A stretch of 64,000 nucleotides of DNA from Ranitomeya imitator (lineage: Eukaryota). Below the pieces are notes generated by a model. It saw only the letters and a list, made by a program, of their open reading frames with translations. It searched no databases and was not told the DNA's origin. Of the stretch, positions 17,388 to 62,395 are shown one piece after another. Within the stretch, counting starts at the first letter, position 1. Every line of letters starts with the position of its first letter. The position numbers and the translations under genes were made by a program. Location: NCBI RefSeq assembly GCF_032444005.1, contig NC_091288.1, positions 16,120,001 through 16,184,000 of the forward strand, in the 5' to 3' direction.

Positions 17388-18092
17388 TAGGTAAAACTGG
17401 ATGGACTTATCTACTTTAAATTATGAAAATGTTATTACGTAAGCCTAATGGTGGTTGCAATAAAAGTAAAGTTCAGAAAATAGCAGAAGTGTTTTTCTAT
17501 TTCTTTTTTCTAATATATTCCATGTACTGCGAAGTTGTGCAGAATAACAAGTCCTCATACGACTAAGTTGGAAAGGAAGAAAAGTAAAGTTATTTTTGAT
17601 TCTGCAGAAATCCTTAACACCATAACCATCTAATGGTGGATCTTATTTCATCTTGAAAAGCGAACTCTCTTTAAAAAACAAAAAAAAGTAAAATAAGTTA
17701 TACAAAAGCACGATACAACATAAAAAGGCAAAAAAAAGTATCCAAGAGTAAATGGGGTTTCTTACTCTTGCTGTTCTAGCCACATTATAGCTTGTGCAAC
17801 GTGGTCATATATGGCAGAAGCATCTGGGGAAGAGCTTTTGAGAAACAAAAACAGAAATTTGCTATTAAACAGTAACGTGTCACTCTGGGCACAAGGGTGC
17901 AACACAACCTTGATACAAGGGTTAACCTGGGAGGCGATTCTGGAAATCTGTGTACTTTATCAAGTAATAAAAAACTTATTATCGAAAGTGAAAATGATCA
18001 CGGGGATTTTTTTTCTCCCCTTTCTGTACAGAATATAAATAACACACTAGCAGATCTTGTACAGAAAGGTGAAAACACCTGTAGACCGGACG

Positions 18093-18706
18093 ATGTTCTC
18101 AAGACTTCTGGGAATTTTTGGAATAACCAATCCGACTTTGCTAAGTGACGATGAGAGAAAGCAGGCCATGGAAGCTAAAGAACGAACAAAACGACTTTTA
18201 TCTGATGCTCTGAAGAAAAAGGAAATTCTGGTGGAAGATCTGAAGTTGTTTAGTGACTTGAAGTTAGAGAACCATAGTCCATTCCTCACCACAAATCTGG
18301 TGGAGGAGCTGAGCCGGGAACTAGAGAAGGTGACGTTTGCAAAAAATAGAATTTCTAAAGAAGATCTAGAAGTTATTGCGTATGTATACCCCGGCTCTGA
18401 TGATAGAACCATCTATCTATGTGCACGATTTTTTAAAATGGATCCAAAATCTAAATCCCAAGAAGCGACAATTATCCACGAGGTTTCCCACTTTCTTGGT
18501 TACGGTCATACAGTCCAGGAGAACAGTGACAGAGTACAGAAGTCTCCACAGTCCATGTTGTGTCCTCAGACGGCTTACTCTGTGGCTTCAGCCCTGACAT
18601 CGTCCATGGACCATCGTGGAACCTTCACAAATGGCTCCTACTCCTGCTGTGGTGAGACCTCCCGGGACACCGTGTGCGAGAAATCCTGGGTTTGTTACTA
18701 TGTCAG
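18093..18706 (+). CDS. M35/aspzincin-like zinc metallopeptidase gene copy 1, peptidase exon (coding part)
   Basis: Acceptor tttctgtacag|AAT at 18031 and ATG at 18093. Encodes AYVYPGSDDRTIYLCARFF, TIIHEVSHFLGYGH and YSCCGETSRDTVCEKS. Donor AG|GTAGGT at 18706/18707. The start codon is inferred. Confidence 0.78.
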
Positions 18707-19485
18707 GTAGGTGTCACATATTTATGTGTTACGTCTAGTAACTTACTAGTATACTATAAATAACCAAAAGAATGGAGAGCAAAGCAAAAAGTGAAGCAGA
18801 AAAAGTTCTAGTTAGGGTTTCACCTCATATGTATGGCAATTTTTCAATTTGTTGCTCTAGCCCTTTATACCCCGAGGAAGATTAAGGGGTGCGCTGACAC
18901 CCCCTGCACTCAGGAGCCGGGTACATGTTCTGGTAGCATTCCTCTAGTTAGGTATATTGGATATATAAACTATGGCGGGAATATTGCTAGAATGATGCAT
19001 CAAAATGTGTTAACTGGGACAATGGTCATAAAAATTTGTCATGTCTTTTAGGACTCCCGTGTTTCAGAACAAATTTACAACAGCTCTGAACTATTCAAAA
19101 TTTTATACGTTTTCTGACGCGACTATCCCGGTGCTGTGAGCGTCCACGCTCCCTTTTGCTTCTGTCACACTTTTTTTGTATTATGTTCTTAAAAAAAAAA
19201 AAGTAAAAAGACACAATTTTTGGCCATACTTGCCTTCTGAGAAATATTTTGGGACTTTTTTTATATAATGTTTTTATGAATATTTGTGGCTAAATGTTTG
19301 CTACATAGATGATAATCATGGCTGCTGTAATCTAGCAACTTCCTAGATACAGATACAATAGAAAGAAGGCAGAATACCTTACAGAAGAACAACATGCAGG
19401 TTCTGATGTTTAACATTAGACCTAACTAGATAATTTAAATTATATATATATATATATATATTTCTTTTTTCATTTTATTTATCAG

Positions 19486-19651
19486 GTCGATGTGCAGAGC
19501 AGAACGACTGAGGAAGCAACTATTGCTGGTGCGGAGATATTCCGATGGTGATGAGACCTATACTAGGGCTACGTTAAGATTAGCGTTGCGCCGCTATTGC
19601 GTCGGCGCCGCAGCGGCGACGCAGCGGCGACGCGCCCTATGTTTAACATAG
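19486..19651 (+). CDS. Copy 1 terminal exon, truncated inside a MITE
   Basis: ttttatttatcag|G TCG ATG TGC AGA GCA GAA CGA CTG is in phase with the upstream donor. (R)SMCRAERLRKQLLLVRRYSDGDETYT is homologous to the paralog tail exons. It reads into the MITE and stops at TAG 19649-19651. Confidence 0.6.
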
Positions 19652-19822
19652 GGGACGCGTGCGTCGTTTTGGTGGCGTTTTTCGCCACGTGCGTCGTTTC
19701 CGACGCTAGCGTCGGACGCAAGAAAACGCTACATGTAGCATTTTCTGTGCGTCCGATTTTCATCAAAAACGACGCACGCGTTTTTGCGCGCGTTGCGTCG
19801 CCACGCTAATGTGAACGTAGCC
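19567..19822. mobile_element. PIF/Harbinger-like MITE inserted in the copy 1 tail exon
   Basis: TIRs GGCTACGTTAAGATTAGCG / CGCTAATGTGAACGTAGCC, flanked by TAG/TAC. Removing it restores colinearity with paralog GATGAGACCGATACTACC. Confidence 0.85.
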
Positions 19823-20358
19823 TACCTGATGATACAGATGTGGCTGATGAAGAGTCAGATACTTTGTAGTGTAAGGACAGTCGCTTCTTTTGAAGATGCC
19901 GATACGTCTGATGACGAGATTCATACTTCTGCAGAGCAGACAGATAATGTTGTACAGTGTGAAAAGAGATGGATGACTCTGATGAAAAGACAGAACTGTT
20001 AATGAAGCAGAAAAATCTGATGAAGAAACAAATCAATCTAATGAAGAAACCGCAAAATCTGATGACGCAGAATAATGTTCTGAAGACAAAGGCGAATAGT
20101 GTGAAGACTCTGGAGGATCAGTTCCAGACAAAGGCCGATTTGGTGACAACAAAAGATGATATAAGGGAGACAGTGGCTGATATGTTGGAGACGGACACAG
20201 ATATGTTGACGACACTGGTGTATATGGTGAAAACAATGGCCAATACTGTGAAGCTTGATTCCATTTTTAGTAAAGATAATGGCCGAAAAATGGTGAAGCG
20301 TGAGGCAAATAAAGTGGAGAGAAAGTTCAATATGTTGAAGACACAATCTGATACTTAA
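19823..20358 (+). pseudogene. Disconnected remainder of the copy 1 acidic/coiled-coil tail
   Basis: DDTDVADEESDTCSVRT..FEDADTSDDEI..EQTD..KRW is homologous to the 40 kb and 55 kb exons. It carries a frameshifting deletion near 19985, then KQKNLMKKQINLMKK heptads. Confidence 0.75.
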
Positions 20359-20556
20359 AAGATAAACCCAAGTACTGTGAAGACTTTGAGTGATATCAGA
20401 AGGATAAAGATGTTGAAGTTACAGGCTGATTTATTGAAAGTACAGACTGATGTTTTCAACCCCAACTATGGGCTCAGGCAAATTGAAATAGAGGCCAAAA
20501 GTAGAATAAAGTTACCAGAATGTCAGTGACTTTAAAAAAAAAAAAGTACAGCTTAA

Positions 20557-21512: not shown

Positions 21513-21811
21513 TTAAAGAACCATAGAAATCATCTCCACCTGCTATCGGCAGAATTAATTCTCAATATGTATTTATATTAAGCGCTCAGTGAGATTTGCT
21601 GTTGTGTACGCCGGTCTTTTACCGAGTTGTACAGGAGTAGGATTTGACAAATCACATTTAAGAATTCTGTTCACTGATAAAGTTAAAATAGAATTATTCT
21701 GAAAAATAGATTTTAATAAATATAATTAAAAATCATGTATTACCCTCAAAGTTGTGGTAGTAATGCACATTGATGAGGATAATGTTAATGTATAATCCTA
21801 TACATATCCTA

Positions 21812-23293
21812 TCTACTATATAATTGTCTATGGGTCACTTCTGTCTGTCTGTCCTTCTGTCTGTCTGTCCTTCTGTCTGTCGCAGATATTCATTGGACGC
21901 GGCCTCTGTCTGTCATGGAAGCCAAGTCGCTGATTGGTCTCGGCAGCTGCCTGTCATGGCTGCCGTGACCAATCAGCGACGGGCACAGTCCGATTAGTCC
22001 CTCCCCTGCACTCACTGCCCGGCGCCCGCTCCATAATCACCTCCAGTCACCGCTCACACAGGGTTAATGGCCGCGGTGTAGCGCACTCCATTACCGCTGC
22101 TATTAACCGTGTGTCCCCAACTATTTACTATTGACGCTGCCTATGCAAAATCAATAGTAAAAATATGTCATGTTAAAAGTAATAATTAAAAAAAATCCTG
22201 CTATACTCACCATCCGCCGCCTTTCGCGCTCCTCGCGACGCTGCGGTGACCGCTCCATGCAAGCGGCAGGTTCCGGTCCCAATGATGGAACGCCAGAAGG
22301 ACCTTCCATGACGTCACGGTCATGTGACCGCGACGTCATCACACCCTGGGACCGGAAGCTGCCGTCTGCTGTCAACACGGTCATGTGACCACGACGTCAT
22401 CACGGGTCCTGCGCGAGAAGGACCTGCCATGACGTCACGGTCATGTGACCGCGACATCACCACACCCTGGGACCGGAAGCTGACGCCTGCACCGCGCACA
22501 GGACCAGGACTTCAACGGGCGTTTGGAGGGTGAGTATATGTTTATTTTTATTTTAACTCTGTATACTACGTGGCTCTGTGCTGTATACTCTGTCGCTGTG
22601 CAATATACTACGTACGTGGCTGGGCAATATACTACGTGGCTGGGCAATATACTACGTGACTGGGCAATATACTACGTGGCTTGGCAATATACTACGTGGC
22701 TGGGCAATATACTACGTGGCTGGGCAATATACTACGTGGCTGGGCAATATACTACGTGACTGGGCAATATACTACGTGGCTGGGCAATATACTACGTGGC
22801 TGGGCAATATACTACGTGGCTGGGCAATATACTGCGTCGCTGGGCAATATACTGCGTCGCTGAGCAATATACTACGTGGCTGGGCAATATACTGCGTCGC
22901 TGAGCAATATACTACGTGGCTGGGCAATATACTGCGTCACTGGGCAATATACTACGTCGCTGGGCAATATACTGCGTGGCTGGGCAATATACTGCGTGGC
23001 TGGGCAATATACTACGTGGCTGGGCAATATACTGCGTCACTGGGCAATATACTACGTGACTCTGGGCAATATACTACGTGGCTGGGCAATATACTACGTG
23101 ACTCTGGGCAATATACTACGTGGCTGGGCAATATACTACGTGACTGGGTAATTTACTACGTGGCTGGGCAATATACTGCGTCACTGGGCAATATACTACG
23201 TCACTGGGCAATATACTGCGTGGCTGGGCAATATACTATGTGGACATGCATATTCTAGAATACCCGAAGCGTTAGAATCGGGCCACCATCTAG
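21812..23293 (+). mobile_element. Probable non-autonomous Helitron
   Basis: 5' A|TCTACTATAT, (CTGT)n near the start, a subterminal hairpin CCCGA..TCGGG, and a CTAG|T 3' end. No TSD seen. Confidence 0.55.
22600..23240. repeat. 20-bp minisatellite (gtggctgggcaatatactac), ~30 copies
   Basis: Direct head-to-tail repeats with few variants and no spacers. Confidence 0.95.
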
Positions 23294-23400
23294 TATAATA
23301 TATAATCCTAATTAATACCCTATCCTCATGTAGATGGGTATAACAGAAAAAAATAAAGGGACAAAAAGAAAGTCAGAGCCAGAATAGTAGAAATCATTAA

Positions 23401-28740: not shown

Positions 28741-28792
28741 TGTGACTATTTTTTTTACTTCATAATAATAATTATTTATGGGTGTATATATA

Positions 28793-33336: not shown

Positions 33337-33962
33337 ATGAAAACAGTAAGGCCACGGAAGCCAAAGAGAAGGACCATGAATAATCGATGTTTGTTGAGTG
33401 AAGATGAGAGAAAGCAGGCCACGGAAGCTAAAGAACAAACCCAACGACTATTATCTGATGCTCTGAAGAAAAAGGAAAGTCTCCTGGTGGAAGATCCCGA
33501 GGTGTTTGGAGAACTAAATTTGAAGAAGCTTTGTCCATTCCTAACCACAGATCTGGTGGAGGAGCTGATCCGAGAACTAGAGAAAGTGACATTTGCAAAA
33601 AATAAAGATCCCAAGCAAGATATTGGAATTAGTGCGTATGTATACCGCGGCTCTGAAGATAGAACCATCTACCTATGTGCACCATTTTGGAAAATGGATT
33701 CAAAATTTAAATCCCAGCAAGATACAATTATCCACGAGGTTTCCCACTTTATTGGTTATGGTGATACAGTCCAGAAGAACACTGAGGGAGTGCAGAAGTC
33801 TCCACAGTCCATGTTGTGTCCTCAGACCGCTTACTCAGTGGGTTTAGCCCTGACATTGGACATGGATCATCCTGGAACCTTCACAGATGGCTCCTACTCC
33901 TGCTGTGGTGAGACCTCCCGGGACACCGTGTGCGAGAAATCCTGGATCTGTAACCACATCAG
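33337..33962 (+). CDS. M35/aspzincin-like metallopeptidase gene copy 2, peptidase exon
   Basis: Acceptor ttttcag|AAT at 33241, with in-frame ATGs at 33337 and 33376. Encodes AYVYRGSEDRTIYLCAPFW and TIIHEVSHFIGYGD. Donor AG|GTAGGT at 33962/33963. Confidence 0.75.
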
Positions 33963-34000
33963 GTAGGTGTCACATATTTATCTATTTCTAGACAGTATAA

Positions 34001-35060
34001 ATCGCTGTGAATGTAGTGACTCATAAATCCAGGTGTTAAATTGAGTCCTAGTGTCAACGAATTGAACATATTCATTAGTTTGAATTCACAAATTTTTCTT
34101 TCCCTGTGATCCTTAAAATGACCTTTTAGTATTAAGACTTTTAAATCTGTCATACTGTGTCCAGGTCCAGAGAAATGTTTTCCCACAGGTGTGTCCATTT
34201 CATTCCTGATTGTGTGTCTGTGTAGATTCATCCTTGTTTGTATTCTTTGCATGGTTTCCCAAATATAAATACTTCCAGGGCACCTCGTACATAGTATCTG
34301 TCACGCCGTAAGCGGCGATAAAGGGGCAGGACGGCGTACTGGGACCCGCACCTGTCCCTACCACTTTAATGGGGCCCTGGCTTTCCCTTATCTCGGGGGT
34401 ACCTATGATGGTTAGGAGGCCCGAGCTGCCAGCGTATCACTGTCTCCTGTGCAGGCCCTATCAGTGGCCCCCTCTCCCCCCAAAGGAGGTGGACTGCACC
34501 AGTGTAATAATACAACAAATAGGAGGGTATACAGACAAGGTAACTAAAAGATTCAAACTCACCAAATGCTCACACAACCACAGAAGTAACACATAGAAGG
34601 GAAGATAAGGAAAAAACTAAGAAGGAAAACAGGTTTAACATGCAACCAAAACAGCAGACACCAATCTCTGTAAATAAACCTCCAACACCAACACTATGCT
34701 CCTTCAACCTCCAAGCCAGGCAGTAGAACTGATCACTGACTCTAGCTGTAGTCAGGACTGGGTCTATATAGAGGATCAGATTACAAAATCCACTTCAGCT
34801 GAGAGAGACCCAGCTCTCAGCAATAAAGTTAACTCCTGCACTGCTGGCACAAAGCAGCCAGGTCAGAATACAGGTGAAGAGCTTCTGTTCACTGTGTGTG
34901 AATGAGGCCCAGAGCGCTGCGGTTCTCTGGAACCTCTCTGTCGCGGTAGTCCCGTGACAGTATCATGTACACCACGTTGGAGGATGTACATGAAAAGGAA
35001 CCCGTGACCTTATAGTCCTGATTTGTGTTTGGTACACGGACTATATTTGTTGGTAATAGT
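34001..35060 (-). mobile_element. Penelope-like element GIY-YIG fragment (minus arm), interrupted by a solo LTR
   Basis: With the LTR removed it reads YKVTGSFSCTSSNVVYMILCTRCPGSIYIWETMQRIQTRMNLHR..PVGKHFSGPGH..EFKLMNMFNSLTLGLN. Confidence 0.85.
34299..34959. mobile_element. Solo LTR
   Basis: TGTCACG...CGTGACA termini, with a 5-bp TSD GTATC at 34294-34298 and 34960-34964. Confidence 0.88.
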
Positions 35061-35215
35061 GACGGGCACATTCCCTTGTAACAATAAAAAATGCAAAACG
35101 TGTACCCACATATTACCAACAAATATAGTTCGGACACACCTGTGGGAAAACATTTCTCTGGTCCTGGAAACAGTGTGACAGATTTAAAATTCTTAATACT
35201 AAAAGGTCATTTTAA

Positions 35216-38200
35216 CCCCTTTCTGACATATGACGTACTATCCCGTCGAGGTTGGGTGGGCCCGTATGCCCACCGAAGGGATAGTACGTCATACGCGATC
35301 GGCCGCGCTCACGGGGGGAGCGCGGCCGGGTGTCAGCTGCCTATCGCAGCTGACATCCAGCACTATGTGCCAGGAGCAGTCACGGACCGCCCCCGGCACA
35401 TTAACCCCGGCACACCGCGATCAAACATGATCGCGGTGTGCCGGCAGTATAGGGAAGCATCGCGCACGGAGGGGGCTCCCTGCGGGCTTCCCTGAGACCC
35501 CCGGAGCAACGCGATGTGATCGCGTTGCTGCAAGGGTCTCTTACCTCCTCCTCCTTGCGGGCCCGGATCCAAGATGGCCGCGGCATCCGGGTCCTGCAGG
35601 GAGGGAGGTGGCTTACCAAGTGCCTGCTCAGAGCAGGCGCTTGGTAAGCCGCAGCGCTATAAGTCAGATCGCTGATCTGACAGAGTGCTGTGAAAATTGT
35701 CAGATCAGCGATCTGTGATGTCCCCCCCCCCCCCCCGAGACAAAGTAAAAAAGTTTTTAAAAAAATTTCCACATGTGTAAAAAAATAAAAATAAAAAATT
35801 CCTAAATAAAGAAAAAAAAATATTCCCATAAATACATTTCTTTATCTAAATAAAAAAAAAACAATAAAAGTACACATATTTAGTATCGCCACGTCCGTAA
35901 CGACCCAACCTATAAAACTGTCCCACTAGTTAACCCCTTCAGTAAACACCGTAAGGAAAAAAAAAACGAGGCAAAAAACAACGCTTTATTATCATGGTAC
36001 CGCTGAAAACGTCATCTTGTCCCGCAAAAAACGAGCCGCCATACAGCATCATCAGCAAATAAATAAAAAAGTTATAGTCCTGAGAATAAAGTGATGCCAA
36101 AATAATTATTTTTTCTATAAAATAAAAAACACATAAAAAATGATATAAATGAGGTATCGCTGTAATCGTACTGACTTGAAGAATAAAACTGCTTTATCAA
36201 TTTTACCAAACGCGGAACGGTATAAACGCCTCCCCCAAAAGAAATTCATGAATAGCTGGTTTTTGGTCATTCTGCCTCACAAAAATCGGAATAAAAAGCG
36301 ATCAAAAAATGTCACGTGCCGGAAAATGTTACCAATGAAAACGGCAACTCGTCCCGCAAAAAAACAAGACCTCACATGAGTCTGTGGACTCAAATATGGA
36401 AAAATTATAGCTCTCAAAATGTGGTAATGCAAAAAATATTTTTTGCAATAAAAAGCGTCTTTCAGTGTGTGATGGCTGCCAATCATAAAAATCAGCTAAA
36501 AAACCCACTATAAAAGTAAATCAAAACCCCCTTCATCACCCCCTTAGTTAGGGAAAAATTTAAAAAATGTATTTATTTCCATTTTCCCATTAGGGTTAGG
36601 GCTACGGTTAGGGCTACTGTTAGGGTTAGGGCTAGGGTTAGGGTTAGGGTTAGGGCTAGGGTTAAGGCTACAGTTAGGGTTGGGACTAGGGTTAGGGCTA
36701 GGGTTAGGGCTAGGGTTAGGGTTGGGGCTAGGGTTAAGGCTACAGTTAGGGTTGGGGCTAAAGTTAGGGTTGGGGTTAGGGTTGGGGCTAGGGTTATGGT
36801 TAGGGTTAGGGCTAGGGTTAAGGCTACAGTTAGGGTTAAGGCTACAGTTAGGGCTGGGGCTAAAGTTAGGGTTAGGGTTTGGATTACATTTACAGTTGGG
36901 AAAAGGGTTGGGATTAGGGTTAGGGGTGTGTCTGGATTAGAGGTGTGGTTAGGGTTACCGTTGGGATTAGGGTTAGGGGAGTGTTTGGATTAGGGTTTCA
37001 GTTATAATTGGGGGGTATCCCACTGTTCAGGCCCATCAGGGGCTCTCCAAACACAACATCCGATCTCAATTCCAGCCAATTATGCGTTGAAAAGGTAAAA
37101 CAGTGCTCCTTCCCTTCCGAGCTCTCCTGTGTGCCCAAACAGGGGTTTACCCCAATGTATGGGGTATCAGCGTACTCAGGACAATTGGACAACAACATTT
37201 AGGGTCCAATTTCTCCTGTTACCCTTGGAAAAATACAAAACTGGGGGCTAAAAAATAATTTTTGTGGAAAAAAAAATATATTTTTTATTTGCACGGCTCT
37301 GCGTTATAAACTGTAGTGAAACACTTGGGGGTTCAAAGCTCTCACAACACATTTAGATGAGTTCCTTAGGGGGTCTACTTTCCAAAATGGTGTCACTTGT
37401 GGGGGGTTTCTACTGTTTAGGTACATTAGGGGCTCTGCAAACGCAATGTGACACCTGCAGACCATCCCATCTAAGTCTATATTCCAAATGGCGCTCCTTC
37501 CCTTCTGAGCCCTCCCATGCGCCCAAACGATGGTCCCCCCCCCCCCCCCCCACATATGGGGTATCAGCGCACTCAGGACAAATTGGACAACAACTTTTGG
37601 GGTCCAATTTCTCCTTTTACCCTCGGGAAAATACAAAACTGGGGGCTAAAAAACAATTTTTGGGGGAAAAAATTTTTGTTTTATTTTTACGGCTCTGCAT
37701 TATAAACTTCTGTGAAGCCCTTGGTGGGTCAAAGTGCTCACCACACATCTAGATAAGTTCCTTAGGGGGTCTACTTTCCAAAATGGTGTCACTTGTGGGG
37801 GGTTTCAATGTTTAGGCACATCAGTGGCTCTCCAAATGCAACAAGGCGTCCCATCTCAATTCCTGTCAATTTTGCATTGAAAAGTCAAACGGCGCTCCTT
37901 CCCTTCCGAGCTCTCCCATGCGCCCAAACAGTGGTTTACCCCCACATATGGGGTATCAGCATACTTAGGACAAATTGTACAACAACCTTTGGGGTCCAAT
38001 TTCTTCTCTTACCCTTGGGAAAATAAAAAATTGGGGGCGAAAAGATAATTTTTGTGAAAAATATGATTTTTTATTTTTACGGTTCTGCATTATAAAGTTC
38101 TGTGAAGCACTTGGTGGGTCTAAGTGCTCACCACACCTCTACATAAGTTCCTTAAGGGGTTTACTTTCCAAAATGGTGTCACTTGTGGGGGGTTTCAATG

Positions 38201-38837
38201 TTTAGGCACATCAGTGGCTCTCCAAACACAACATGGCGTCCCATCTCAATTCCTGTCAATTTTGCATTGAAAAGTCAAATGGCGCTCCTTCGCTTCCGAG
38301 CTCTGTCATGCGCCCAAACAGTGGTTTACCCCCACATATGTGGTATCGGCGTACTCAGGACAAATTGTGCAACAACTTTTGGGGTCTATTTTCTCCTGTT
38401 ACCCTTGGTAAAATAAAACAAATTGGAGCTGAAGTAAATTTTTTGTGAAAAAAAATTAAATGTTAATTTTTATTTAAACATTACAAAAATTCGTGTGAAA
38501 CACCTGAAAAATGTGCTGATGTATAGTAGACATGTGGGAAATGTTACTTATTAAGTATTTTGTGTGACATATCTCTGTGATTTAATTGCATAAAAATTCA
38601 AAGTTGGAAAATTGCGAAATTTTCGCCAAATTTCCATTTTTTTCACAAATAAACGCAGGTAATATCAAGGAAATTTTACCACTATCATGAAGTACAATAT
38701 GTCATGAGAAAACAGTGTCAAAATCACTGGGATCCGTTGAAGCGTTCCAGAGTTATAACCTCATAAAAGGACAGTGGTCAGAATTGTAAAAATTGGCCTG
38801 GTCATTGACGTGCAAACCATCCTTGGGGGTAAAGGGG
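35216..38837. mobile_element. Complete 3.6-kb piggyBac-type non-autonomous element
   Basis: TTAA|CCCCTTT ... AAAGGGG|TTAA (TSD 35212-35215 and 38838-38841). No transposase ORF. Confidence 0.85.
36588..36995 (+). repeat. Degenerate telomere-like (TTAGGG)n array inside the piggyBac-type element
   Basis: TTAGGG interspersed with CTAGGG, TTGGGG, TTAAGG and CTACAG variants over ~400 bp. Confidence 0.9.
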
Positions 38838-40025
38838 TTAAGGATGACCGGAAAGAAAAATTTGGGAATTCAAACTAATGAAGATGTTCAATTTTTTGAC
38901 ACTAGGACTCAATTTAACACCTGGATTTATGAGTCACTACATGGATACAATTCACACCTCCACCAGATGGGCTCCAGATAACTAAGAACATATTCCCACT
39001 GCCTCTCCATTTGTAAGAAAATGCCTAATTTGATTTCCTTGGCTTATCTTTACAAGGCATCACACTTCCCACCCCCCTGAACAAATGTCCAGCTGTAGTA
39101 TTCTTTAAATATTGTGCTTTTTTCTTTATTAATCTATTTGTAATCTGCCTGAAGAAGGAGCCTCTGTGCTCTGAAAGCTGCAAACATATTATTTTCTGGT
39201 TAGCCAATAAAGGTATCACTCCGAGAATACTTCTGTCATCATTGGGCAGAAAAGTATTCACATCGATTTTTGGGCTAACACAGTACCACAATACAATTTG
39301 TTATTGTACATCATAAACCGTATCAAGAATGTCTGGTGATTTTCTGATCTACTGCAAATTGCCATAAAGAGGAAAGAGCGGAGCAAGTAGGAAACATCTA
39401 CAGGGTGATGAGTAGTTTTTCCCTCATATGGGGCAAAGTTTCATTTTACTACCCCCGATCTGTATCTAAATACCCTGACCAGGTGGTGTGCGGACACCCA
39501 GAATCCAGAGTGTATGCCTCTACCTATGTACGTTGGGTATATAAACAATGGGAGGGAATGTATAGAATGTATAATAAATGTGGCATATCTGTTGGCTGTC
39601 TCTGCACCAGAAAATTAAATCTAAAGCAGCTCTTGATTTTACGTACTTTCTCATGCAAGTTATTCCTCTGTTCAGGGAGGGACCAAGCTCCATTTTGTTA
39701 AACCCTCAATTTATTTTTATTTTTTTTTACAAAAGTAACACAAAGAGCAAAAAGTTGAAACTTTTGACCATGTCTTGTGGCAAATTTTGGAACCTGTTTA
39801 TGATAAATAATAGATATCCCTCTTTGTGTTTCTACAAGTGACTCTGAGATAGTAGCTCCGTTGCTGATACATGCGGCTGCTGAAATTTACTCACTCCCTA
39901 GATTCAGATACAAAAGTAAAAGGTCAGGAGAAAAACTAGGTTTCAAGTATCAGGAGAGTAAGTTCTGATTTTTAACCTTGCATCTAACTGATTTTTTTTT
40001 TATTATTATTATTATTATGTATCAG

Positions 40026-40881
40026 GTTGGTGAAGTTGATGAACAAAATAGAACATCTGTGGAAACAAATATTGCTGGTGCCGAGATGTCCTGCTGGGGA
40101 TGAGACCGATGCTACCAGTGATGATACAGAAGAGTTGGGGGCAGATACTTGTAACGTAAAGACAGACTGTTCTTCTGAAGATCCGGATATATCTGACGAT
40201 GAGATAGAGGCGTCTGAGGAGCAAACATATATTGTTATGCAGATGGTAAAGAGATGGACGACTCTGGTGAAGACTCAGTCCGGTCTGTTGAAGACACAAA
40301 CCAATTTGTTAGAGAAGCAGAAAGATCTGATGAAACAAAACAATCAATTGAAAACGGAGACAAATCAATTGAAGACGCAGAGAAATCTATTGAAGACACA
40401 AAGAAATCTATTGAAGACGAAGAGAAAGCTATTGACGCAGAGAAATCTATTGAAGACGCAGAGAAATCTATTGAGTCAGAGAAATCTATTGAAGACTCAG
40501 AGAAATCTATTGAGGCAGAGAAATCTATTGAAGACGCAGAGAAATCTATTGAGTCAGAGAAATCTATTGAAGACGCAGAGAAATCTATTGAGGCAGAGAA
40601 ATCTATTGAGGCAGAGAAATCTATTGAGGCAGAGAAATCTATTGAAGACACAGAGAAATCTATTGAAGACGCAGAGAAATCTGTTAATGGCACAGGATAA
40701 TGTTTCGAAGGAAGAGATCAATATGTTGGAGACAGAGGTCGACATGTTGGAGACACGGTTCAATATGTTTAAGACATCGGACAATGTGGAGAAAACAAAG
40801 GCGGATGTGGTGAACACCCTGAGCGATTTACTGAAGACACTGGCCGATGTGTTGGAGACACAGTATATGCGGAAACATTGA
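40026..40881 (+). CDS. Copy 2 terminal exon: acidic linker plus 16 RNLL-type repeats (predicted coiled coil)
   Basis: (tta)n tgtatcag|G TTG GTG AAG. The phase-2 junction gives H-I-R-L-V-K-L. Open for 284 codons to TGA. Spliced product from ATG 33337 is 493 aa by my arithmetic. Confidence 0.78.
40372..40690 (+). repeat. Coding minisatellite of mixed 21-nt and 18-nt units
   Basis: agagaaatctattgaagacgc (RNLLKTQ) and agagaaatctattgaggc/gagtc (RNLLRQ/RNLLSQ). Confidence 0.95.
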
Positions 40882-45982: not shown

Positions 45983-45985
45983 TTA

Positions 45986-46800: not shown

Positions 46801-47305
46801 GAAATTATATTGCTGGTGCTGAGACCGATGCTACCAGTGATGATACAGATGCCCCGGCAGAAGAGTTGGGGACAGATACTTGTAGCATAAAGACAGACTG
46901 TTCTTCTGAAGATCCGGATATATCTGATAACGAGATAGATGCGTCTGAGGAGCGGACAGATATTGTTATGAAGATGATAAAGAGATGGACCAATCTGGTG
47001 AAAACTCAGGCCGGTCTGTTGAAGACACAAACCAATTTGTTAGAGAAGCAGAAAGATCTGATGAAGCAAATCAATCGAAGATGCAGAGAAATCCTGTTGA
47101 AACAAACTAACTTCTTCAAGCCATATGATAATGTTTTGAAGGAAAAGGCCACTATGGTAAAGACACTGGTCGATATATGGGAGACGCAACCAAAATGTTG
47201 GAGACACAGGTCAATGTGGAGAAGATAAAGGCGGATGTGGTGAAGACCCTGAGCGATATGCTGCAGATACTGGCCGATGTGTTGGAGACACAGTACATGC
47301 GTAAA
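46801..47305 (+). pseudogene. Orphan, decayed tail exon (copy 3) lacking its peptidase exon
   Basis: TDATSDDTDAPAEELGTDTCSIKTDCSSEDPDISDNEIDASEE..KRWTNLVKTQAGLLKTQTNLLEKQKDLMKQ. The 5' end is fused to the Tc1 fragment, later frameshifts are present, and an LTR sits in the last codons. Confidence 0.82.
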
Positions 47306-51206: not shown

Positions 51207-52731
51207 CCGTATATAGTCGAGTATAAGCCGACCGGAGTATAAGCCGACCCCCCTAATTTTGCCACAAAAAACTGGGAAAACTTATTGACTTGAGTATAAG
51301 CCAAGGGTGGAAATGCAGCATTTACCGGTGAATTTTAAAAAATAAAAATAGATCATTATTTCCCCATAGATGTACCATATAGTGCTCTGTACCGTTCATA
51401 TTTCCCCATAGCTGTGCCATATAGTGCTCTGCGCCGTTCATTTTTGCCCCATAGCTGTGCCATATAGTGCTCTGCACCGTTCATATTTCCCCTTAGCTGT
51501 GCCATATAGTGCTCTGCACCGTTCATTATTGCCCCATAGCTGTGCCATATAGTGCTCTGCACCGTTCATATTCCCCCTTGGCTGTGCCATATAGTGCTTT
51601 GCACCGTTCATATTTCCCCATAGCTGTGCCATATAGTGCTCTGCACCGTTCATATTTCCCCATAGCTGTGCCATATAGTGCTCTGCACCGTTCATATTTC
51701 CCCATAGCTGTGCCATATAGTGCTCTGCACCGTTCATATTTTCCCATATCTGCCCCATATAGTGCTCTGCACCGTTCATATTGCCCCATATCTGCCCCAT
51801 ATAGTGCTCTGCACCGTTCATATTGCCCCATATCTGCCCCATATAGTGCTCTGCACCGTTCATATTGCCCCATATCTGCCCCATATAGTGCTCTGCACCG
51901 TTCATATTGCCCCATATCTGCCCCATATAGTGCTCTGCACTGTTCATATTGCCCCATAGCTGTGCCATATAGTGTTCTGCACCGTTCCTATTGCCGCATA
52001 TCTGCCCCATATAGTGTTCTGCACCGTTCCTATTGCCCCATATCTGCCCCATATAGTGCTCTGGACCGTTCATATTGCCCCATAGATGCTCGGTATAAAT
52101 CTGTGCCGCCGCTGCTGCTGCAATAAAAAAAAAAGCCATACTCACCTCTCTTGATTGCAGCTCCCGGCGTCTCGTCCCGGCGTCTCTCCGCTCTGAGTGA
52201 TCAGGTAGAGGGCGCCGCGCACACTATATGCGTCATCGCGCCCTCTGACCTGCACAGTCAGAGCGCAGATAGACGCCGGGAAGATGGAGCGGCGCTCGGC
52301 GGCTGGAACGGCGCTCAGCGGCTGGAACGCGGACAGGTGAATATTACATACTTACCTGGTCCCGACGTCCGGCTCCCCCTGCCGTCTCACGGTCTTCTGT
52401 GCTGCAGCTTCTTCCCCTTTTCAGCAGTCACTGGCACCGCCGATTAGAGAAATGAATAGGCGGCTCCACCCCTATGGGAGGTGGAGCCGCTTATTCATTT
52501 CTCTAATGAGCGGTCCCATGTGACCGCTGAACAGTGGAAGAACTGTAGCACCGAAGACCTGGGACAGGCGGGGAGCGCCAGGATCGCTGGGACTAGGTAA
52601 GTATACCTCAGCGCCCTCACCCCCTCACCCGCCGACCCCACAGCTACCGTGACTCGAGTATAAGCCGAGAGGGGCACTTTCAGCCCAAAAATTTGGGCTG
52701 AAAATCTCCGCTTATACTCGAGTATATACGG
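51207..52731. mobile_element. TcMar/Tc2-like non-autonomous element
   Basis: TA|CCGTATATAGTCGAGTATAAGC ... GCTTATACTCGAGTATATACGG|TA. Confidence 0.8.
51360..52085. repeat. 30-bp minisatellite (ccccatagctgtgccatatagtgctctgcaccgttcatatt-like units)
   Basis: More than 20 head-to-tail units in two subtypes, inside the Tc2-like element. Confidence 0.95.
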
Positions 52732-53979
52732 TATGTGTCTCACTTACATATATGTAGAGAGAGAGAGACTGTATATATATTTTCACAAATATTTGAGGTC
52801 ATGGACACATTATTTGTCCATTTTGCAAGCCAGTGAGAAAATCTCGCTGTACGGATGCCATACACATGTCACACGGATACTTTGATGTGAGGAAATCGCA
52901 TCCTCACATTGCAGACTGATGACATACAGATCACGGTTCATGAAACATTTGTGCGATTCTTGTCCGTGAAAAACCGTGACCGCGACATCATCGAAGGTCC
53001 TTCACTCTCTGCATTCTTAGGAACGGAGGCAGACGCTTGCAGTGCTGAGAGCCAGGGTTCGTCGGAGGGCTGAGTATATCCATATTTTTTATTTTTATTC
53101 TTTATTTTTTACATGAATATGGATCCCAGGGCCTGAAGGAGAATCTCCTCTCCTCCAGACCATGGGAACCACACGCCGTATAAGATGACCCACGTCTTAT
53201 ACGACGGGTATATCCCAAATTCCATATTTTATATGGAAAAGTTGGGGGTCGTCTTATACGCCCAGTCGTCTTATACACCAGAAAATACTGTATGTCGCTT
53301 ATACCTCATGGTGATAGGGATAATATTTCAATTAAAAAAAAAAAATTGTAGAATTGCTGTTTTTCCATTCCTTTCTTTGCAAAATGTGAATTCAAGTTTT
53401 TCAATACTTTATATAAAACCAGAATATGGTAATTAAAAACAACAAGCTCTAAAGAAAATTAAATTATGGCTCTTGGTGATGAAGCTCCGGATTTCAGTAC
53501 AATCATCTAATGGTGGATCTTATTTCATCTTGGAGAATTATTGCGCCGTCTTGAAGAATTATTAAGTTAATGATGCTAAATTGTAAACAAATCAAACAAT
53601 ATTAAAAGCTAAAAAAAAGTGTAAAAATAAACAATGGTCTTTGTTCTCACTGTTCTTGTGATGTTTTTCCTTTTGTGACTTGCTCATACTTTGTGTAAGT
53701 AATGGCAGTGGAGCCTTCTGTATGAAATAAAAACTACATTTCACCATTGAGCAACAGCATTGAAAAATTAAAATGTTTGCTCTGAAAACAAAACGCCAAT
53801 GACAATGGAAGGGATTTTCCGTGTGGCTATTCTGCTGTATGGGAAAAATCTGTTTACTCTGCTTCTATATGACGTAATAAAAGTTGTCTGTAGTGAAAAT
53901 GAAAGGAACTTTTTCTGCACAGAATATCAAGAAGACGTCAGAATAACTTGGACAGGTAACAATTCCTGTAGACTGGACG

Positions 53980-54641
53980 ATGATCTGGCTTCTGAAGCTC
54001 TTGTTGGTACTGGAAACAATTCAAGTGAGGCTAAAGAAGATAAAGAGAAGGACCAGGAACAATCCATGTTTTCTGAGTAAAGATGAGATAAAAGAAGCCG
54101 AAGAAGCTAAAGAACGAACCCAACGACTTTTATCTGATGCTCTGAAGAAAAAAGAAAGTCTCCTGGTGGAAGATCCCAAGGTGTTTGGAGACCTAAACTT
54201 GAAGAAGCTTTGTCCATTCCTAACCACAGATCTGGTGGAGGAGCTGATCCGAGAACTAGAGAAAGTGACGTTTGCAAAAAATAAAGATCCTAAGCAAGAT
54301 ATTGGAACTGTTGCGTATGTATACCGCGGCTCTGAAGATAGAACCATCTACCTATGTGAACTATTTTGGAAAATGGATCCAAAATTTAAGTCCCATCAAG
54401 ACACAATTATCCACGAGGTTTGCCACATTCTTGGTTATGATCATACAGTCCAGGAGAACAGTGACGGAGTGCAGAAGTCTCCACAGTCCATGTTATGTCC
54501 TCAGACCACTTTCTCGGTGGCTTCAGCCCTGACATCATCCATGGATCATCCTGGAACCTTCACAGACGGCTCCTACTCCTGCTGTGGTGAGACCTCCCGG
54601 GACACCGTGTGCGAGAAATCCTGGATCTGTAACCACATCAG
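53980..54641 (+). CDS. M35/aspzincin-like metallopeptidase gene copy 4, peptidase exon
   Basis: Acceptor ttttctgcacag|AAT at 53922. ATG at 53980 is homologous to the ATG of copy 1. Encodes AYVYRGSEDRTIYLCELFW and TIIHEVCHILGYDH. Donor AG|GTAGGT at 54641/54642. Confidence 0.8.
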
Positions 54642-55391
54642 GTAGGTGTCACATATTTATCTATTTCTAGACAGTATAATGTCTGGTGATTTACTGATCT
54701 ACTGCAAACTGCCATAAAGAGGAAAGAGCGGAGCAAGTAGGAAACATCTACAGGGTGATGAGTAGTTTTTCCCTCATATGGGACAAAGTTTCATTTTACT
54801 ACCCTCGATCTGTATCTAAATACCCTGACCAGGTGGTGTGCTGACACCCAGAATCCAGAGTGTATGCCTCTACCTATGTACGTTGGGTATATAAACAATG
54901 GGAGGGAATGTATAGAATGTATTATAAATGTGGCATATCTGTTGGCTGTCTCTGCACCAGAAAATTAAATCTAAAGCAGCTCTTGATTTTACATACTTTC
55001 TCATGGAAGTTATTCCTCTGTTCTTGGAGGGATCAAGCTCAATTTTATTAAATCCTCAATTTTATTAATTTTTTTACAAAAGTAACACAAAGGGCAAAAA
55101 GTTGAAATTTTTGACCATACCTGTCTTGTGGCAAATTTTGGAACCTGTTTATGATAAATAATAGATATCCCTCTTTGTGTTTCTATAAGTGACTCTGAGA
55201 TAGTTGCTCCAGAGCTGATAAACGCGGCTGCTGAAATTTACTTACTCCCTAGATTCAGATACAAAAGTAAAAGGTCAGGAGAAAAACTAGGACTCAAGTA
55301 AAGGCAAATTATCAGGAGAGTAAGTTCTGATTTTTAACCTTGCATCTAACTAATTTGATAATTTTTTTTAATTATTATTATTATATATCAG

Positions 55392-56130
55392 ATTGGTGAA
55401 GTTGATCGACAAAGTAGAACGTCTGTGGAAACAAATATTGCTGGTGCCGAGATGTCCTGCTGGGGATGAGACCGATACTACCAGTGATGATACAGATGCT
55501 CCGGTAGAAGAATTGGAGTCAGATACTTGTAGCGTAAAGACAGAATTTTCTTTTGAAGATCCGGATATATCTGATGACGAGATAGATGAGTCTGAGGAGC
55601 AGACAGATATTGTTATGCAGATGATAAAGAGATGGACGACTCTGGTGAAAACTCTGTCCGGTCTGTTGAAGACACAAACCAATTTGTTAGAGAAGCAGAA
55701 ATATCTGATGAAACAAATCAATCTATTGAAGATGGATAGAAATCTATTGAAGACACAGAGAAATCTATTGAAGACGAAGAGAAATCTATTGAAGAAGCAG
55801 AGAAATCTATTGAAGACGAAGAGAAATCTGTTGAGGCAGAGAAATCTATTGAGTCAGAGAAATCTATTGAGGCAGAGAAATCTATTGAGTCAGAGAAATC
55901 TATTGAAGACACAGAGAAATCTGTTAATGGCACAGGATAATGTTTTGAAGGAAGAGGACAATATGGAGAAGACACTGGACGACAAGGATGACGAGTGGGA
56001 GATACTGTTCGATATGTTTAAGACATCGGACAATGTGAAGAAAACAAAGGCGGATGTGGTGAACACCCTGAGCGATTTACTGAAGACACTGGCCGATGTG
56101 TTGGAGACACAGTATATGCAGAAACGTTGA
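55392..56130 (+). CDS. Copy 4 terminal exon: acidic linker plus 10 RNLL-type repeats
   Basis: tatatatcag|A TTG GTG AAG, in frame after a 750-bp intron. Open to TGA; spliced product 466 aa (662+739 nt). Confidence 0.8.
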
Positions 56131-62330: not shown

Positions 62331-62395
62331 AAGCATCAACACAACCTATTCTGACATCTGAATCCTTGTCGTTCCGTTCTAGACAGAATCCTATC

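What the first reader, a model, noticed from the sequence alone, without database searches (positions are those of the whole stretch)
18032..56130. Hidden two-exon gene family: M35-like zinc peptidase spliced to an acidic linker and a cationic repeat coil
Seen: three peptidase ORFs (18057, 33325, 53980) each 'end' at CAG GTAGGT, where the TAG is part of a canonical donor. Each is followed by a polypyrimidine/AT tract ending in CAG, then an exon whose first base completes the AG codon (AG|G, AG|G, AG|A = Arg) and continues in frame. The same phase-2 junction occurs in all three copies across introns of ~780, 6063 and 750 bp. The ORF-track 'peptidase' and 'coiled-coil' ORFs are therefore probably one protein of ~466-493 aa. 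Its order is helical N-terminus, AYVY..IYLC..F[WF], TIIHExxH, QTAYS, YSCCGET..VC, Asp/Glu-rich linker, (RNLLKTQ)n coil. Known: AYV..IYLC..F plus HExxH is the signature of M35 aspzincins (deuterolysin, lysine-specific metalloendopeptidases such as GfMEP and AsaP1), which I know as secreted fungal/bacterial enzymes without such a tail. Inference: this is a lineage-expanded, possibly uncharacterised amphibian protease architecture.
Basis: partly seen in the sequence, partly recalled or inferred. Interest (0 to 1): 0.88.

Follow-up and report, generated by a model that had tools for sequence, protein, structure and literature searches.

The report
Frog zinc-peptidase genes with helical tails
The window holds a tandem cluster of real two-exon frog genes, already in the public annotation but never studied, that join a fungal/bacterial-type (M35 "aspzincin") zinc-peptidase domain and a small zinc knuckle to an acidic linker and a long, positively charged helical tail.

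Summary
Three paralogous ORFs (from 18093, 33337 and 53980) end at CAG|GTAGGT. Introns of 779, 6063 and 750 bp end in a pyrimidine/AT tract plus CAG. The next exon continues in phase 2.

Two copies give intact proteins of 493 and 466 aa. Copy 1's second exon is broken by a 256-bp MITE-like insert and frameshifts. A fourth, orphan exon-2 fragment lies at 46811-47305.

The gene is not "hidden". The spliced copy 3 is identical to a public Ranitomeya imitator protein, and paralogues and orthologues carry the same junction. RNA-run contigs cover both exons and not the intron, but no junction-spanning contig was shown.

Exon 1 is an aspzincin by three tests: Pfam above threshold, profile against GfMEP E 6e-13, and predicted fold Z 10-11. 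It departs from the M35 pattern: the third zinc ligand is His in two copies, the motif Tyr is lost, and there is no propeptide. It is followed by a conserved BTK-type H-CC-C zinc motif.

The module occurs in fishes, amphibians, reptiles and birds, often fused to ApoL. No mammal was seen and no paper was found.

Function is inferred: an intracellular zinc peptidase, or a pseudo-peptidase, positioned by a helical tail. It is a new variant of a known kind, of moderate interest.

The parts
53980..54641 (+). Copy 3, coding exon 1: N-terminal helix, aspzincin-fold domain, BTK-type zinc motif and the start of the junction helix. The last two bases, AG, begin a split Arg codon.
   Evidence: ORF. Pfam PF14521 33.5 bits and BTK 24.9 bits. 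AlphaFold2 model pLDDT 90.9. RNA-run contigs cover it. Part of public protein P0067.
54412..54444 (+). Copy 3 zinc-site motif HEVCHILGYDH (residues 145-155): HExxH, Gly, then His at the position of the aspzincin Asp ligand.
   Evidence: The alignment to GfMEP GTKD(130) is.
54547..54612 (+). Copy 3 BTK-type zinc motif, H-x10-CC-x8-C (residues 190-211).
   Evidence: Pfam PF00779 24.9 bits against a cut-off of 24. H190, C201, C202 and C211 are kept in 58 of 62 family domains.
54642..55391 (+). Copy 3 intron, 750 bp, GT..AG, phase 2.
   Evidence: Sequence. Contig depth is zero across 54660-55307 in three of four runs and near zero in the fourth, while both exons are covered.
55392..56130 (+). Copy 3, coding exon 2: rest of the junction helix, acidic disordered linker (net -16), long cationic helix, C-terminal heptad helix, stop codon.
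   Evidence: Identical to P0067 residues 221-466.
55720..55922 (+). Copy 3 tandem array of 21- and 18-nt units encoding RNLLKTQ / RNLLRQ / RNLLSQ (about 10 units).
   Evidence: Tandem Repeats Finder. Unit spacing of 7 and 6 residues.
56280..56285 (+). AATAAA, 150 nt after the copy 3 stop codon. Likely polyadenylation signal (inferred).
   Evidence: Copy 2 has the same signal in the same relative place (41032).
33337..33962 (+). Copy 2, coding exon 1, from the first ATG. Zinc motif HEVSHFIGYGD at 33733-33765 and BTK-type motif at 33868-33933.
33963..40025 (+). Copy 2 intron, 6063 bp. It equals the copy 3 intron plus about 5.3 kb of inserted repeats (34000-39328).
   Evidence: blastn of the copy 3 unit against copy 2. 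Repeats.
40026..40881 (+). Copy 2, coding exon 2 with stop codon. The repeat array at 40342-40682 has about 17 units. AATAAA at 41032.
18093..18706 (+). Copy 1, coding exon 1, intact. Zinc motif HEVSHFLGYGH at 18477-18509 and BTK-type motif at 18612-18677.
18707..19485 (+). Copy 1 intron, 779 bp, GT..AG.
19486..20250 (+). Copy 1 second exon, degenerate. It is in frame for about 54 codons, then interrupted, frameshifted and full of stops.
19567..19822 (.). A 256-bp MITE-like insert with 28-nt terminal inverted repeats, inside copy 1 exon 2.
   Evidence: Inverted repeat I1. Gap in the blastn alignment to copy 3.
46811..47305 (+). Orphan exon-2 fragment. It has no acceptor and no exon 1, carries a frameshift, and abuts Tc1-type transposase remains.
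   Evidence: tblastn, blastn, and Pfam HTH_Tnp_Tc3_2 on 46234-46482.

Best explanation
The window carries a tandem cluster of paralogous protein-coding genes of the mimic poison frog, Ranitomeya imitator. There are two intact copies, one copy with a broken second exon, and one orphan fragment. Each intact gene has two coding exons joined across a phase-2 GT-AG intron.

The product, from N- to C-terminus:
- A short N-terminal helix.
- An aspzincin-fold (M35-like) zinc domain with HExxHxxGxx(H/D).
- A BTK-type His-Cys-Cys-Cys zinc knuckle.
- A helix that runs straight across the exon junction.
- A disordered linker of about 50 residues, net charge about -16.
- One helix of about 130 residues whose core is a fast-evolving 7/6-residue repeat, net charge about +20.
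- A final heptad helix.

Proposed mechanism (inferred, not shown):
- The protein stays inside the cell. It has no propeptide and no uninterrupted hydrophobic leader, and it carries a Cys-rich zinc knuckle.
- It binds two zinc ions, one catalytic and one structural.
- It acts as a zinc endopeptidase whose specificity has moved away from Lys. The helical tail holds it in an oligomer or on an anionic surface such as a membrane or nucleic acid.
- The acidic linker may mask the cationic helix until it is engaged.
- Relatives in turtles, crocodilians and birds carry an ApoL domain in place of this tail, and the family duplicates and diverges quickly. A host-defence role is therefore the favoured but weakly supported guess.

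Sub-confidences: real spliced two-exon genes about 0.93; aspzincin-fold zinc-binding domain about 0.9; catalytically active peptidase about 0.5; immune or membrane role about 0.2. The overall figure of 0.6 is for the statement as a whole, mechanism included.
For: Gene structure:
- Donors, acceptors and phase are conserved in all copies.
- Spliced copy 3 is identical to public protein P0067.
- The RefSeq paralogue XP_069591640.1 and orthologues in Anomaloglossus, Phyllobates and Leptodactylus cover 90-99% of the two-exon protein.

Transcription:
- In four runs from three studies, contig depth lies on 53904-54659. In three of the four it also lies on 55308-55715.
- Depth is zero or near zero in the intron and zero in the 540 bp upstream.
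- Contigs stop exactly at 54641/54642 or start at 55393, with further letters that do not fit the intron.

Fold:
- Pfam PF14521 scores 33.5-38.9 bits against a cut-off of 30.
- The family profile matches GfMEP at E 5.8e-13 and AsaP1 at E 4.8e-10.
- The AlphaFold2 model has pLDDT 90.9.
- VIA-align gives Z 10.1-11.0 to AsaP1, GfMEP and deuterolysin over the whole catalytic domain. The next match scores 7.0.

Zinc sites:
- HExxH plus H/D is kept in 48 of 62 family domains and in all three window copies.
- The H-CC-C set is kept in 58 of 62.
- The BTK Pfam hit is above its cut-off for copies 2 and 3.

Tail:
- The full-length model shows helix 215-237 across the junction, low confidence for 238-286, and helices 287-416 and 423-465.

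Family context:
- ApoL-fused relatives.
- Expansion within dendrobatoids.
- dN/dS of 0.5-0.6 for exon 1 and 0.85 for exon 2.
Against: - No junction-spanning contig or read was displayed. The read laying joint table lists none for 54641>55392. Two contigs that end at the exon edges carry 48-71 further letters that were not placed on the other exon of this copy. They may come from paralogues.
- The public models are gene predictions.
- The catalytic site departs from M35 'HEXXH+D+Y' (PMC8584072). The third ligand is His in copies 1 and 3. The motif Tyr is Gln. The Asp that H-bonds His117 in GfMEP (PMC3268031, Table 1) is Phe or Tyr here.
- Thirteen anuran family domains have lost HExxH but keep the zinc knuckle, so catalysis is dispensable for at least part of the family.
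- Exon 2 evolves almost neutrally (dN/dS 0.85).
- The repeat has only two adjacent Leu per 6-7 residues and mixes 6- and 7-residue units, so it is not a canonical coiled coil.
- Tissue, localisation, zinc content and activity are all untested. No signal-peptide predictor was available.
Confidence: 0.6

Rival explanations
1. Pseudo-peptidase. The aspzincin fold and its two zinc sites serve as a binding or scaffold module with no proteolysis, as in other zincin-fold proteins that have lost activity. The helical tail provides the real function, such as assembly or targeting.
For: - The M35 Tyr and the second-shell Asp are lost in the frog branch, and the third ligand has changed.
- Thirteen anuran domains lack HExxH yet keep the H-CC-C motif. 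N-terminal domains of two-domain frog proteins are degenerate.
- There are precedents for the M35 fold without peptidase activity: lyophyllin (PMC8584072) and the zinc-scavenger Pra1, which is the next-best structural match at Z 7.0.
Against: - All three window copies, and every coil-tailed relative inspected except one Phyllobates protein (P0073), keep H, E, H and a ligand-type residue at +6.
- HExxHxxGxxH without a Tyr is a working arrangement in many metzincins (established knowledge).
- dN/dS of exon 1 is below 1.
Confidence: 0.3
2. There is no single product. The peptidase ORF ends at the TAG, and the coil ORF is a separate gene, a pseudo-exon or non-coding. The public two-exon models would then be prediction artefacts.
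For: - No junction-spanning record was displayed.
- Peptidase-only models also exist in R. imitator (P0078, P0079, P0089, P0093).
Against: - Exon 2 has no ATG-led start of its own near its 5' end.
- Its frame is open only in the phase set by the donor.
- The intron has zero coverage while both exons are covered.
- The same architecture is modelled in four other frog genera.
- The predicted helix is continuous across the junction.
- A Logan contig of a relative (L001) reads through the homologous point with no GTAGGT.
Confidence: 0.04
3. A secreted skin or venom-type precursor. A leader would be followed by a protease, and the acidic spacer and cationic repeats would be processed into amphipathic antimicrobial-like peptides, as in frog skin peptide precursors.
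For: - An acidic segment followed by a cationic amphipathic repeat.
- A hydrophobic N-terminus in copy 3 (MIWLLKLLLVL).
- The species is a poison frog.
- Canonical M35 enzymes are secreted.
Against: - The N-terminal hydrophobic run is short and interrupted by charged residues. It is absent from copy 2 and from most relatives.
- A Cys-rich zinc knuckle of BTK type is typical of intracellular proteins.
- The repeats are only about 29% hydrophobic.
- There is no propeptide.
Confidence: 0.04
4. An M35-fold enzyme with a non-peptidase activity, for example an RNA N-glycosidase like lyophyllin. The cationic tail would bind ribosomes or RNA.
For: - Lyophyllin shows that the fold can depurinate rRNA without zinc (PMC8584072).
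- The tail is strongly cationic.
Against: - The Tyr that lyophyllin needs (its Y137, in the 'HEXXH+D+Y' motif) is the residue lost in the frog proteins.
- No specific similarity to lyophyllin was tested.
Confidence: 0.03

Closest known systems
Peptidyl-Lys metalloendopeptidase of Grifola frondosa (GfMEP, PDB 1g12/1ge6; MEROPS M35, Pfam PF14521 Aspzincin_M35)
   Same: - The AYVYP..IYLC..FW strand-turn and the HExxH helix are shared.
- The family profile matches at E 5.8e-13.
- The predicted fold superposes over the whole 167-residue enzyme, Z 10.5-10.6.
- Salamander, reptile and fish members of the family even keep the full GTxDxxY motif directly after HExxH.
   Different: - GfMEP is a secreted fungal enzyme made with a propeptide. 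The frog proteins have about 30 residues before the domain and no evident leader.
- The spacer between HExxH and the third ligand is 3 residues shorter.
- In the window the ligand is His in copies 1 and 3 and Asp in copy 2, the motif Tyr is Gln, and the Asp154 equivalent is Phe or Tyr.
- A BTK-type zinc knuckle and a tail of about 250 residues follow the domain.
AsaP1 of Aeromonas salmonicida (PDB 2x3a-c) and deuterolysin of Aspergillus oryzae (PDB 1eb6)
   Same: The catalytic fold is the same, with Z 10.1-11.0. The family profile matches AsaP1 at E 4.8e-10.
   Different: These are extracellular enzymes with a large N-terminal propeptide, and AsaP1 is toxic. In AsaP1 the aligned part starts at chain residue 178. 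Neither has a zinc knuckle or a helical tail.
BTK motif (Pfam PF00779) of Tec-family kinases and some Ras GAPs
   Same: The ligand pattern and surrounding residues agree: HPG.F.DG.Y.CC....(8-9)..C. Pfam scores are 24.5-26.3 bits in frog members and 36.7 bits in an eel member, against a cut-off of 24.
   Different: In known proteins the motif follows, and packs on, a PH domain. Here it follows a zincin domain. Structural matches to BTK PH-TH were weak (rank 46, E 1.8). Zinc binding was not tested.
Uncharacterised sauropsid 'PLMP metalloendopeptidase / apolipoprotein L-like' proteins (for example Chrysemys XP_065417389.1, Alligator XP_025050415.1, Struthio XP_068804927.1)
   Same: They carry the same N-terminal aspzincin-plus-H-CC-C module. 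They are true family members, with profile E 1e-60 to 1e-70.
   Different: Their C-terminal half is an ApoL domain (PF05461, E 5e-29 in P0035) instead of the acidic linker and cationic repeat helix. They keep Asp and Tyr of the aspzincin motif.
Metzincins (HExxHxxGxxH/D plus Met-turn)
   Same: The linear motif of copies 1 and 3 (HEVSHFLGYGH, HEVCHILGYDH) reads exactly like the metzincin consensus.
   Different: The fold matches to snapalysin, MMPs and serralysins score only Z 3.3-3.8, against 10-11 for aspzincins. The resemblance arose by an Asp-to-His change within an aspzincin lineage.

Membership tests
Aspzincin / peptidase family M35 (Pfam PF14521) | Profile match above the curated threshold | tested here: met
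   38.9, 35.5 and 33.5 bits against a gathering score of 30 for the three exon-1 products. The full-length protein scores 31.8 bits.
Aspzincin / peptidase family M35 (Pfam PF14521) | HExxH on the active-site helix | tested here: met
   HEVSH, HEVSH and HEVCH in copies 1-3. They lie on predicted helix 138-151.
Aspzincin / peptidase family M35 (Pfam PF14521) | Third zinc ligand Asp and catalytic Tyr within GTxDxxYG ('HEXXH+D+Y', PMC8584072; GfMEP ligands H117, H121, D130, PMC3268031) | tested here: not met
   The window copies read GYGH TVQ, GYGD TVQ and GYDH TVQ. Asp is present only in copy 2, His replaces it in copies 1 and 3, and Tyr is replaced by Gln in all three. Distant family members such as axolotl P0049 (GTEDLAYG) do meet the feature.
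Aspzincin / peptidase family M35 (Pfam PF14521) | Aspzincin three-dimensional fold | tested here: met
   The AlphaFold2 model (pLDDT 90.9) has its best PDB matches in GfMEP, AsaP1 and deuterolysin. Foldseek E is 4e-4 and VIA Z is 10.1-11.0 over model residues 29-192. This is a predicted, not a solved, structure.
Aspzincin / peptidase family M35 (Pfam PF14521) | Secreted zymogen with signal peptide and N-terminal propeptide | tested here: not met
   Only about 28-33 residues precede the domain. The N-termini are short, charged or interrupted, and vary between copies. No signal-peptide predictor was available, so absence of a leader rests on inspection.
Aspzincin / peptidase family M35 (Pfam PF14521) | Zinc-dependent endopeptidase activity (X-Lys specificity in the peptidyl-Lys group) | not testable with these tools
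   This needs recombinant protein and assays.
BTK motif (Pfam PF00779) | His-x10-Cys-Cys-x8/9-Cys ligand set and profile match above threshold | tested here: met
   25.1 and 24.9 bits against a cut-off of 24 for copies 2 and 3; copy 1 scores 19.0 bits, below it. The ligands are kept in 58 of 62 family domains. An eel member scores 36.7 bits.
BTK motif (Pfam PF00779) | Placed directly after a PH domain, on which it packs | tested here: not met
   Here it follows the zincin domain, and there is no PH-domain hit.
Metzincins | HExxHxxGxxH/D motif together with the metzincin fold and Met-turn | tested here: not met
   The linear motif is present. The fold matches to metzincins score only Z 3.3-3.8, against 10-11 for aspzincins.
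Apolipoprotein L fusion subgroup of the same vertebrate family | C-terminal ApoL domain (PF05461) | tested here: not met
   No ApoL hit in the window's tails or in full-length P0067. It is present in turtle P0035, and reported for alligator, ostrich and other birds.
CCDC70 (the name NCBI gives the Leptodactylus homologue P0006) | Sequence homology of the tail to CCDC70 | tested here: inconclusive
   The window's exon-2 products have no Pfam hit at E below 0.7, and the protein atlas gives no hit above 0.68. The name probably reflects repeat composition. No direct comparison with a CCDC70 sequence was made.

The most novel reading that the evidence does not exclude
The aspzincin-plus-BTK-knuckle module may define an old, undescribed family of intracellular effector proteases of bony vertebrates, seemingly absent from mammals. 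On this reading the module is repeatedly coupled to membrane-active or self-assembling tails: ApoL in turtles, crocodilians and birds, and cationic helical repeats behind an acidic mask in hyloid frogs. It would evolve by rapid tandem duplication as part of innate host defence. The frog branch would have converted an Asp-zincin site into a metzincin-like HExxHxxGxxH site.
Probability: 0.2. Interest if true: 0.75.

Novelty: new variant of a known kind. Interest (0 to 1): 0.45.

Why it matters
M35 aspzincins are treated in the literature as secreted fungal and bacterial enzymes, often virulence factors. The held paper library has nothing on vertebrate members.

This cluster shows three things:
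- Vertebrates carry their own divergent, apparently intracellular branch of the family.
- That branch has an added BTK-type zinc knuckle and interchangeable C-terminal tails.
- It offers a natural example of an Asp-to-His switch of the third zinc ligand within one fold.

If the ApoL link reflects function, the family would be a new player in non-mammalian innate immunity. As it stands, the gene models are already public. What is new is their description, not their discovery.

Tried and rejected
- **Direct junction evidence.** One read-laying run on 52500-55715 showed exon-limited coverage but listed no 54641>55392 joint. A search for short Logan-derived proteins spanning the junction (P0067:160-290) found none. 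P0054, which seemed to span it, comes from a genome annotation, not a transcript. Genome loci for P0002 could not be fetched because the files are too large.
- **Tail homology.** Pfam and the protein atlas gave nothing for exon 2. I regard the 'CCDC70' name of one orthologue as a repeat-composition artefact, but did not test this directly.
- **Metzincin membership.** I considered it because of HExxHxxGxxH and rejected it on fold and on the family alignment.
- **Horizontal transfer into frogs.** I rejected it because the module spans fishes to birds.
- **Earlier notes of this scan.** Nothing near this place or by words.
- **Literature.** Searches for locus names and for ApoL plus metalloendopeptidase found nothing. 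One broad search was badly framed and uninformative.
- **Zinc-site geometry.** Model coordinates are not readable from scripts, so it could not be measured.

Full report
**1. What is in the sequence**

With eukaryotic start codons they begin at ATG 18093, 33337 and 53980. Each ends in ..CAG|GTAGGT, so the apparent stop TAG lies inside a consensus donor.

Downstream, T/A-rich tracts end in CAG at 19485, 40025 and 55391. The next base (G, G, A) completes an Arg codon, and the frame runs on. The introns measure 779, 6063 and 750 bp.

Joining the exons in a script gives:
- an open 493-aa product for copy 2 and a 466-aa product for copy 3;
- for copy 1, a frame that runs only about 54 codons into exon 2 and then meets stops.

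blastn against copy 3 shows why copy 1 fails. A 256-bp element at 19567-19822 with 28-nt terminal inverted repeats sits in the exon, and the remaining part is only about 70% identical, with indels.

tblastn with a full-length relative also finds a fourth, orphan exon-2 fragment at 46811-47305. It has no acceptor and no exon 1, carries a frameshift, and lies next to Tc1-type transposase remains.

Copy 2's long intron is the copy 3 intron plus about 5.3 kb of inserted repeats. AATAAA lies 150 nt after the stop codon in both intact copies.

**2. Is the spliced product real?**

An exhaustive HMMER search with exon 1 of copy 3 found only 64 cluster representatives among 1.84 billion. One of them, a 435-aa Ranitomeya imitator protein (XP_069591640.1), has the same ..NHIR|LVKL.. 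junction.

A word-index search then returned P0067, a 466-aa R. imitator protein. It is identical over its whole length to my spliced copy 3. There it is labelled 'unnamed protein product' or 'Lysine-specific metallo-endopeptidase domain-containing protein'.

Orthologues that cover 90-99% of the two-exon protein are annotated in R. variabilis, Anomaloglossus, Phyllobates and Leptodactylus. All of these are gene models, so I looked for RNA evidence.

Contigs of four runs, from three studies and three organism labels, were laid on 52500-55715:
- All four runs cover 53904-54659. Three of them also cover 55308-55715.
- Depth is zero in 54660-55307. The exception is one 90%-identical piece in one run.
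- Depth is zero in the 540 bp upstream of the gene, so genomic DNA is not what is being seen.
- Contigs end exactly at 54641/54642 or begin at 55393, and carry 48-71 further letters that do not fit the intron.

The tool listed no 54641>55392 joint, and the relevant loose ends were not printed. The join itself therefore remains undisplayed. The edge contigs probably come from paralogues whose split codon is AG|G.

Two further attempts to obtain a junction-spanning cDNA failed. A Logan contig of a relative (L001) does read through the homologous point without any GTAGGT.

The AlphaFold2 model of the full protein places one confident helix, residues 215-237, across the junction at residue 221. 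Taken together, I rate the two-exon structure at about 0.93.

**3. What the first exon encodes**

- All three products pass the Pfam Aspzincin_M35 threshold.
- A 62-sequence family profile matches GfMEP at E 5.8e-13 and AsaP1 at E 4.8e-10.
- The domain model has pLDDT 90.9 and pTM 0.84.
- Its best structural matches are GfMEP, AsaP1 and deuterolysin: Foldseek E 4e-4 to 5e-2, and VIA Z 10.1-11.0 over residues 29-192.
- Pra1 scores 7.0 and everything else is at or below 5.6.

The M35 attribution is therefore right.

The details differ from the textbook 'HEXXH+D+Y' pattern (PMC8584072; GfMEP ligands H117, H121 and D130, PMC3268031):
- The family motif is HExxHxLG(T/Y)x(D/H). The GTxD block follows HExxH directly, three residues closer than in GfMEP.
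- Salamander, reptile and fish members keep GTxDxxY. An example is GTEDLAYG in axolotl.
- Frogs read GYxH or GYxD followed by T-V-Q. Here His is the third ligand in copies 1 and 3, Asp in copy 2, and the Tyr is lost.
- The Asp that H-bonds His117 in GfMEP aligns with Phe or Tyr.
- The result looks like a metzincin motif, but the fold is not metzincin (Z 3.3-3.8).

Of the 62 domains, 48 keep HExxH plus H/D. Thirteen anuran domains have lost it.

**4. The YSCCGET..VC block**

This block is a BTK-type zinc motif with the pattern H-x10-CC-x8-C. Pfam BTK scores 25.1 and 24.9 bits, against a cut-off of 24, for copies 2 and 3, and up to 36.7 bits in an eel member. The four ligands are kept in 58 of 62 domains, which is better than the catalytic site. 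It lies beyond the end of the aspzincin superposition. In known proteins the BTK motif follows a PH domain. Here it follows a zincin domain.

**5. The second exon**

In the full-length model and by segment charge:
- Residues 238-286 have low confidence. They are strongly acidic, with 18 Asp/Glu and a net charge of -16.
- Residues 287-416 form one long helix with a net charge of +19.
- Its core, residues 330-400, has a net charge of +20 and consists of RNLLKTQ, RNLLRQ and RNLLSQ units.
- The DNA array has 21- and 18-nt units: about 10 in copy 3, about 17 in copy 2, and 3-4 in the paralogue P0002.
- The mixed 7/6 spacing and only two adjacent Leu per unit argue against a canonical coiled coil in the repeat.
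- The last helix, 423-465, does show a 3.5-residue periodicity.
- No family or atlas match was found for the tail.
- dN/dS between copies 2 and 3 is 0.85 for exon 2 and 0.61 for exon 1.

**6. Family range**

Named members come from the following groups:
- many anurans;
- salamanders (Pleurodeles, Ambystoma);
- squamates (Anolis, Sceloporus, Phrynosoma, Elgaria, Varanus);
- turtles and Alligator;
- birds (Struthio, Apteryx, Chauna and others);
- ray-finned fishes (Anguilla, Huso, Osmerus, Aldrovandia, Colossoma, Trichomycterus).

No mammal appeared in either the exhaustive or the profile search. This is absence of evidence within these databases.

Turtle, crocodilian and bird members carry an ApoL domain after the module (E 5e-29 in P0035). 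Squamate tails show only weak ApoL/SseC-like hits. Some frogs have two or three tandem modules. One transcript-derived relative ends in a transmembrane-like segment.

Canonical M35 enzymes are reached at E about 1e-10 with the profile. A maximum-likelihood tree of frog domains puts the three window copies in two supported Ranitomeya subclades inside a dendrobatoid clade, so the expansion is lineage-specific.

No paper in the held library mentions vertebrate aspzincins or these loci.

**7. Reading**

Shown:
- a tandem cluster of transcribed two-exon genes;
- an aspzincin fold with an intact HExxH;
- a conserved H-CC-C motif;
- an acidic linker and a cationic helical tail;
- wide distribution among non-mammalian vertebrates, with swapped tails.

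Inferred:
- intracellular location;
- two bound zinc ions;
- endopeptidase activity with changed specificity;
- tail-mediated assembly or surface binding, with the acidic linker as a possible mask;
- a host-defence role, suggested only by the ApoL fusions, the rapid duplication and the relaxed constraint.

The main rival is a non-catalytic zinc-binding scaffold, at about 0.3.

**8. Verdict**

The gene is not hidden, one of the three copies is broken, and the peptidase module is not specific to amphibians. What remains of interest is an unstudied vertebrate branch of M35 with an added BTK-type knuckle, a His-for-Asp ligand switch, and modular tails. It is a new variant of a known kind, of moderate interest (0.45).

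Noticed in passing
window 36590-36997 and 24877-24958: Interstitial telomere-like arrays (TTAGGG/CTAGGG variants). The first lies inside the enlarged intron of copy 2.
   Followed up: no
window 37024-38454: A 390-bp satellite, 3.7 copies at 80% match, also inside the copy 2 intron.
   Followed up: no
window 22613-23243 and 51357-52085: Two long minisatellites, 20 bp x 31 and 42 bp x 17. They create spurious long ORFs on both strands.
   Followed up: no
window 52608-53363: This stretch just upstream of copy 3 has very high contig depth in all four runs (hundreds to thousands), with many loose ends. It is presumably a highly repeated, transcribed element.
   Followed up: no
window 58997-62502 (- strand): Pol of a Ty3/gypsy-type retrotransposon in pieces: aspartyl protease, RVT_1, RNase H, integrase zinc domain, SH3_Tf2-1 and chromodomain.
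   Followed up: partly
window 6857-8056 (- strand); 16295-17140 (+); 46234-46890 (+): A 400-aa ORF with a Spin-doc-type zinc finger, probably derived from a transposase, and two Tc1/mariner-type transposase remnants (DDE_3, HTH_Tnp_Tc3_2). The second remnant abuts the orphan exon-2 fragment.
   Followed up: partly
L001 (Logan contig SRR12112769_107855), 84-962: A transcript-derived relative (P0010, 292 aa). Its peptidase module has Tyr in place of the second His of HExxH, and its short tail ends in a hydrophobic, transmembrane-like segment.
   Followed up: partly
Relatives P0001, P0003, P0007, P0075 (Pelobates, Mantella, Hyperolius, Aquarana): Two or three aspzincin-BTK modules occur in tandem within one protein. 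In the two-module proteins the N-terminal module has usually lost HExxH while keeping the H-CC-C motif.
   Followed up: partly
window 53951 / 33271: Similarity between copies 2 and 3 starts only about 30 nt upstream of the copy 3 ATG and runs to about 820 nt past the stop codon. The copies therefore do not share an obvious promoter. The 5' UTR structure and any upstream non-coding exon remain undetermined.
   Followed up: no
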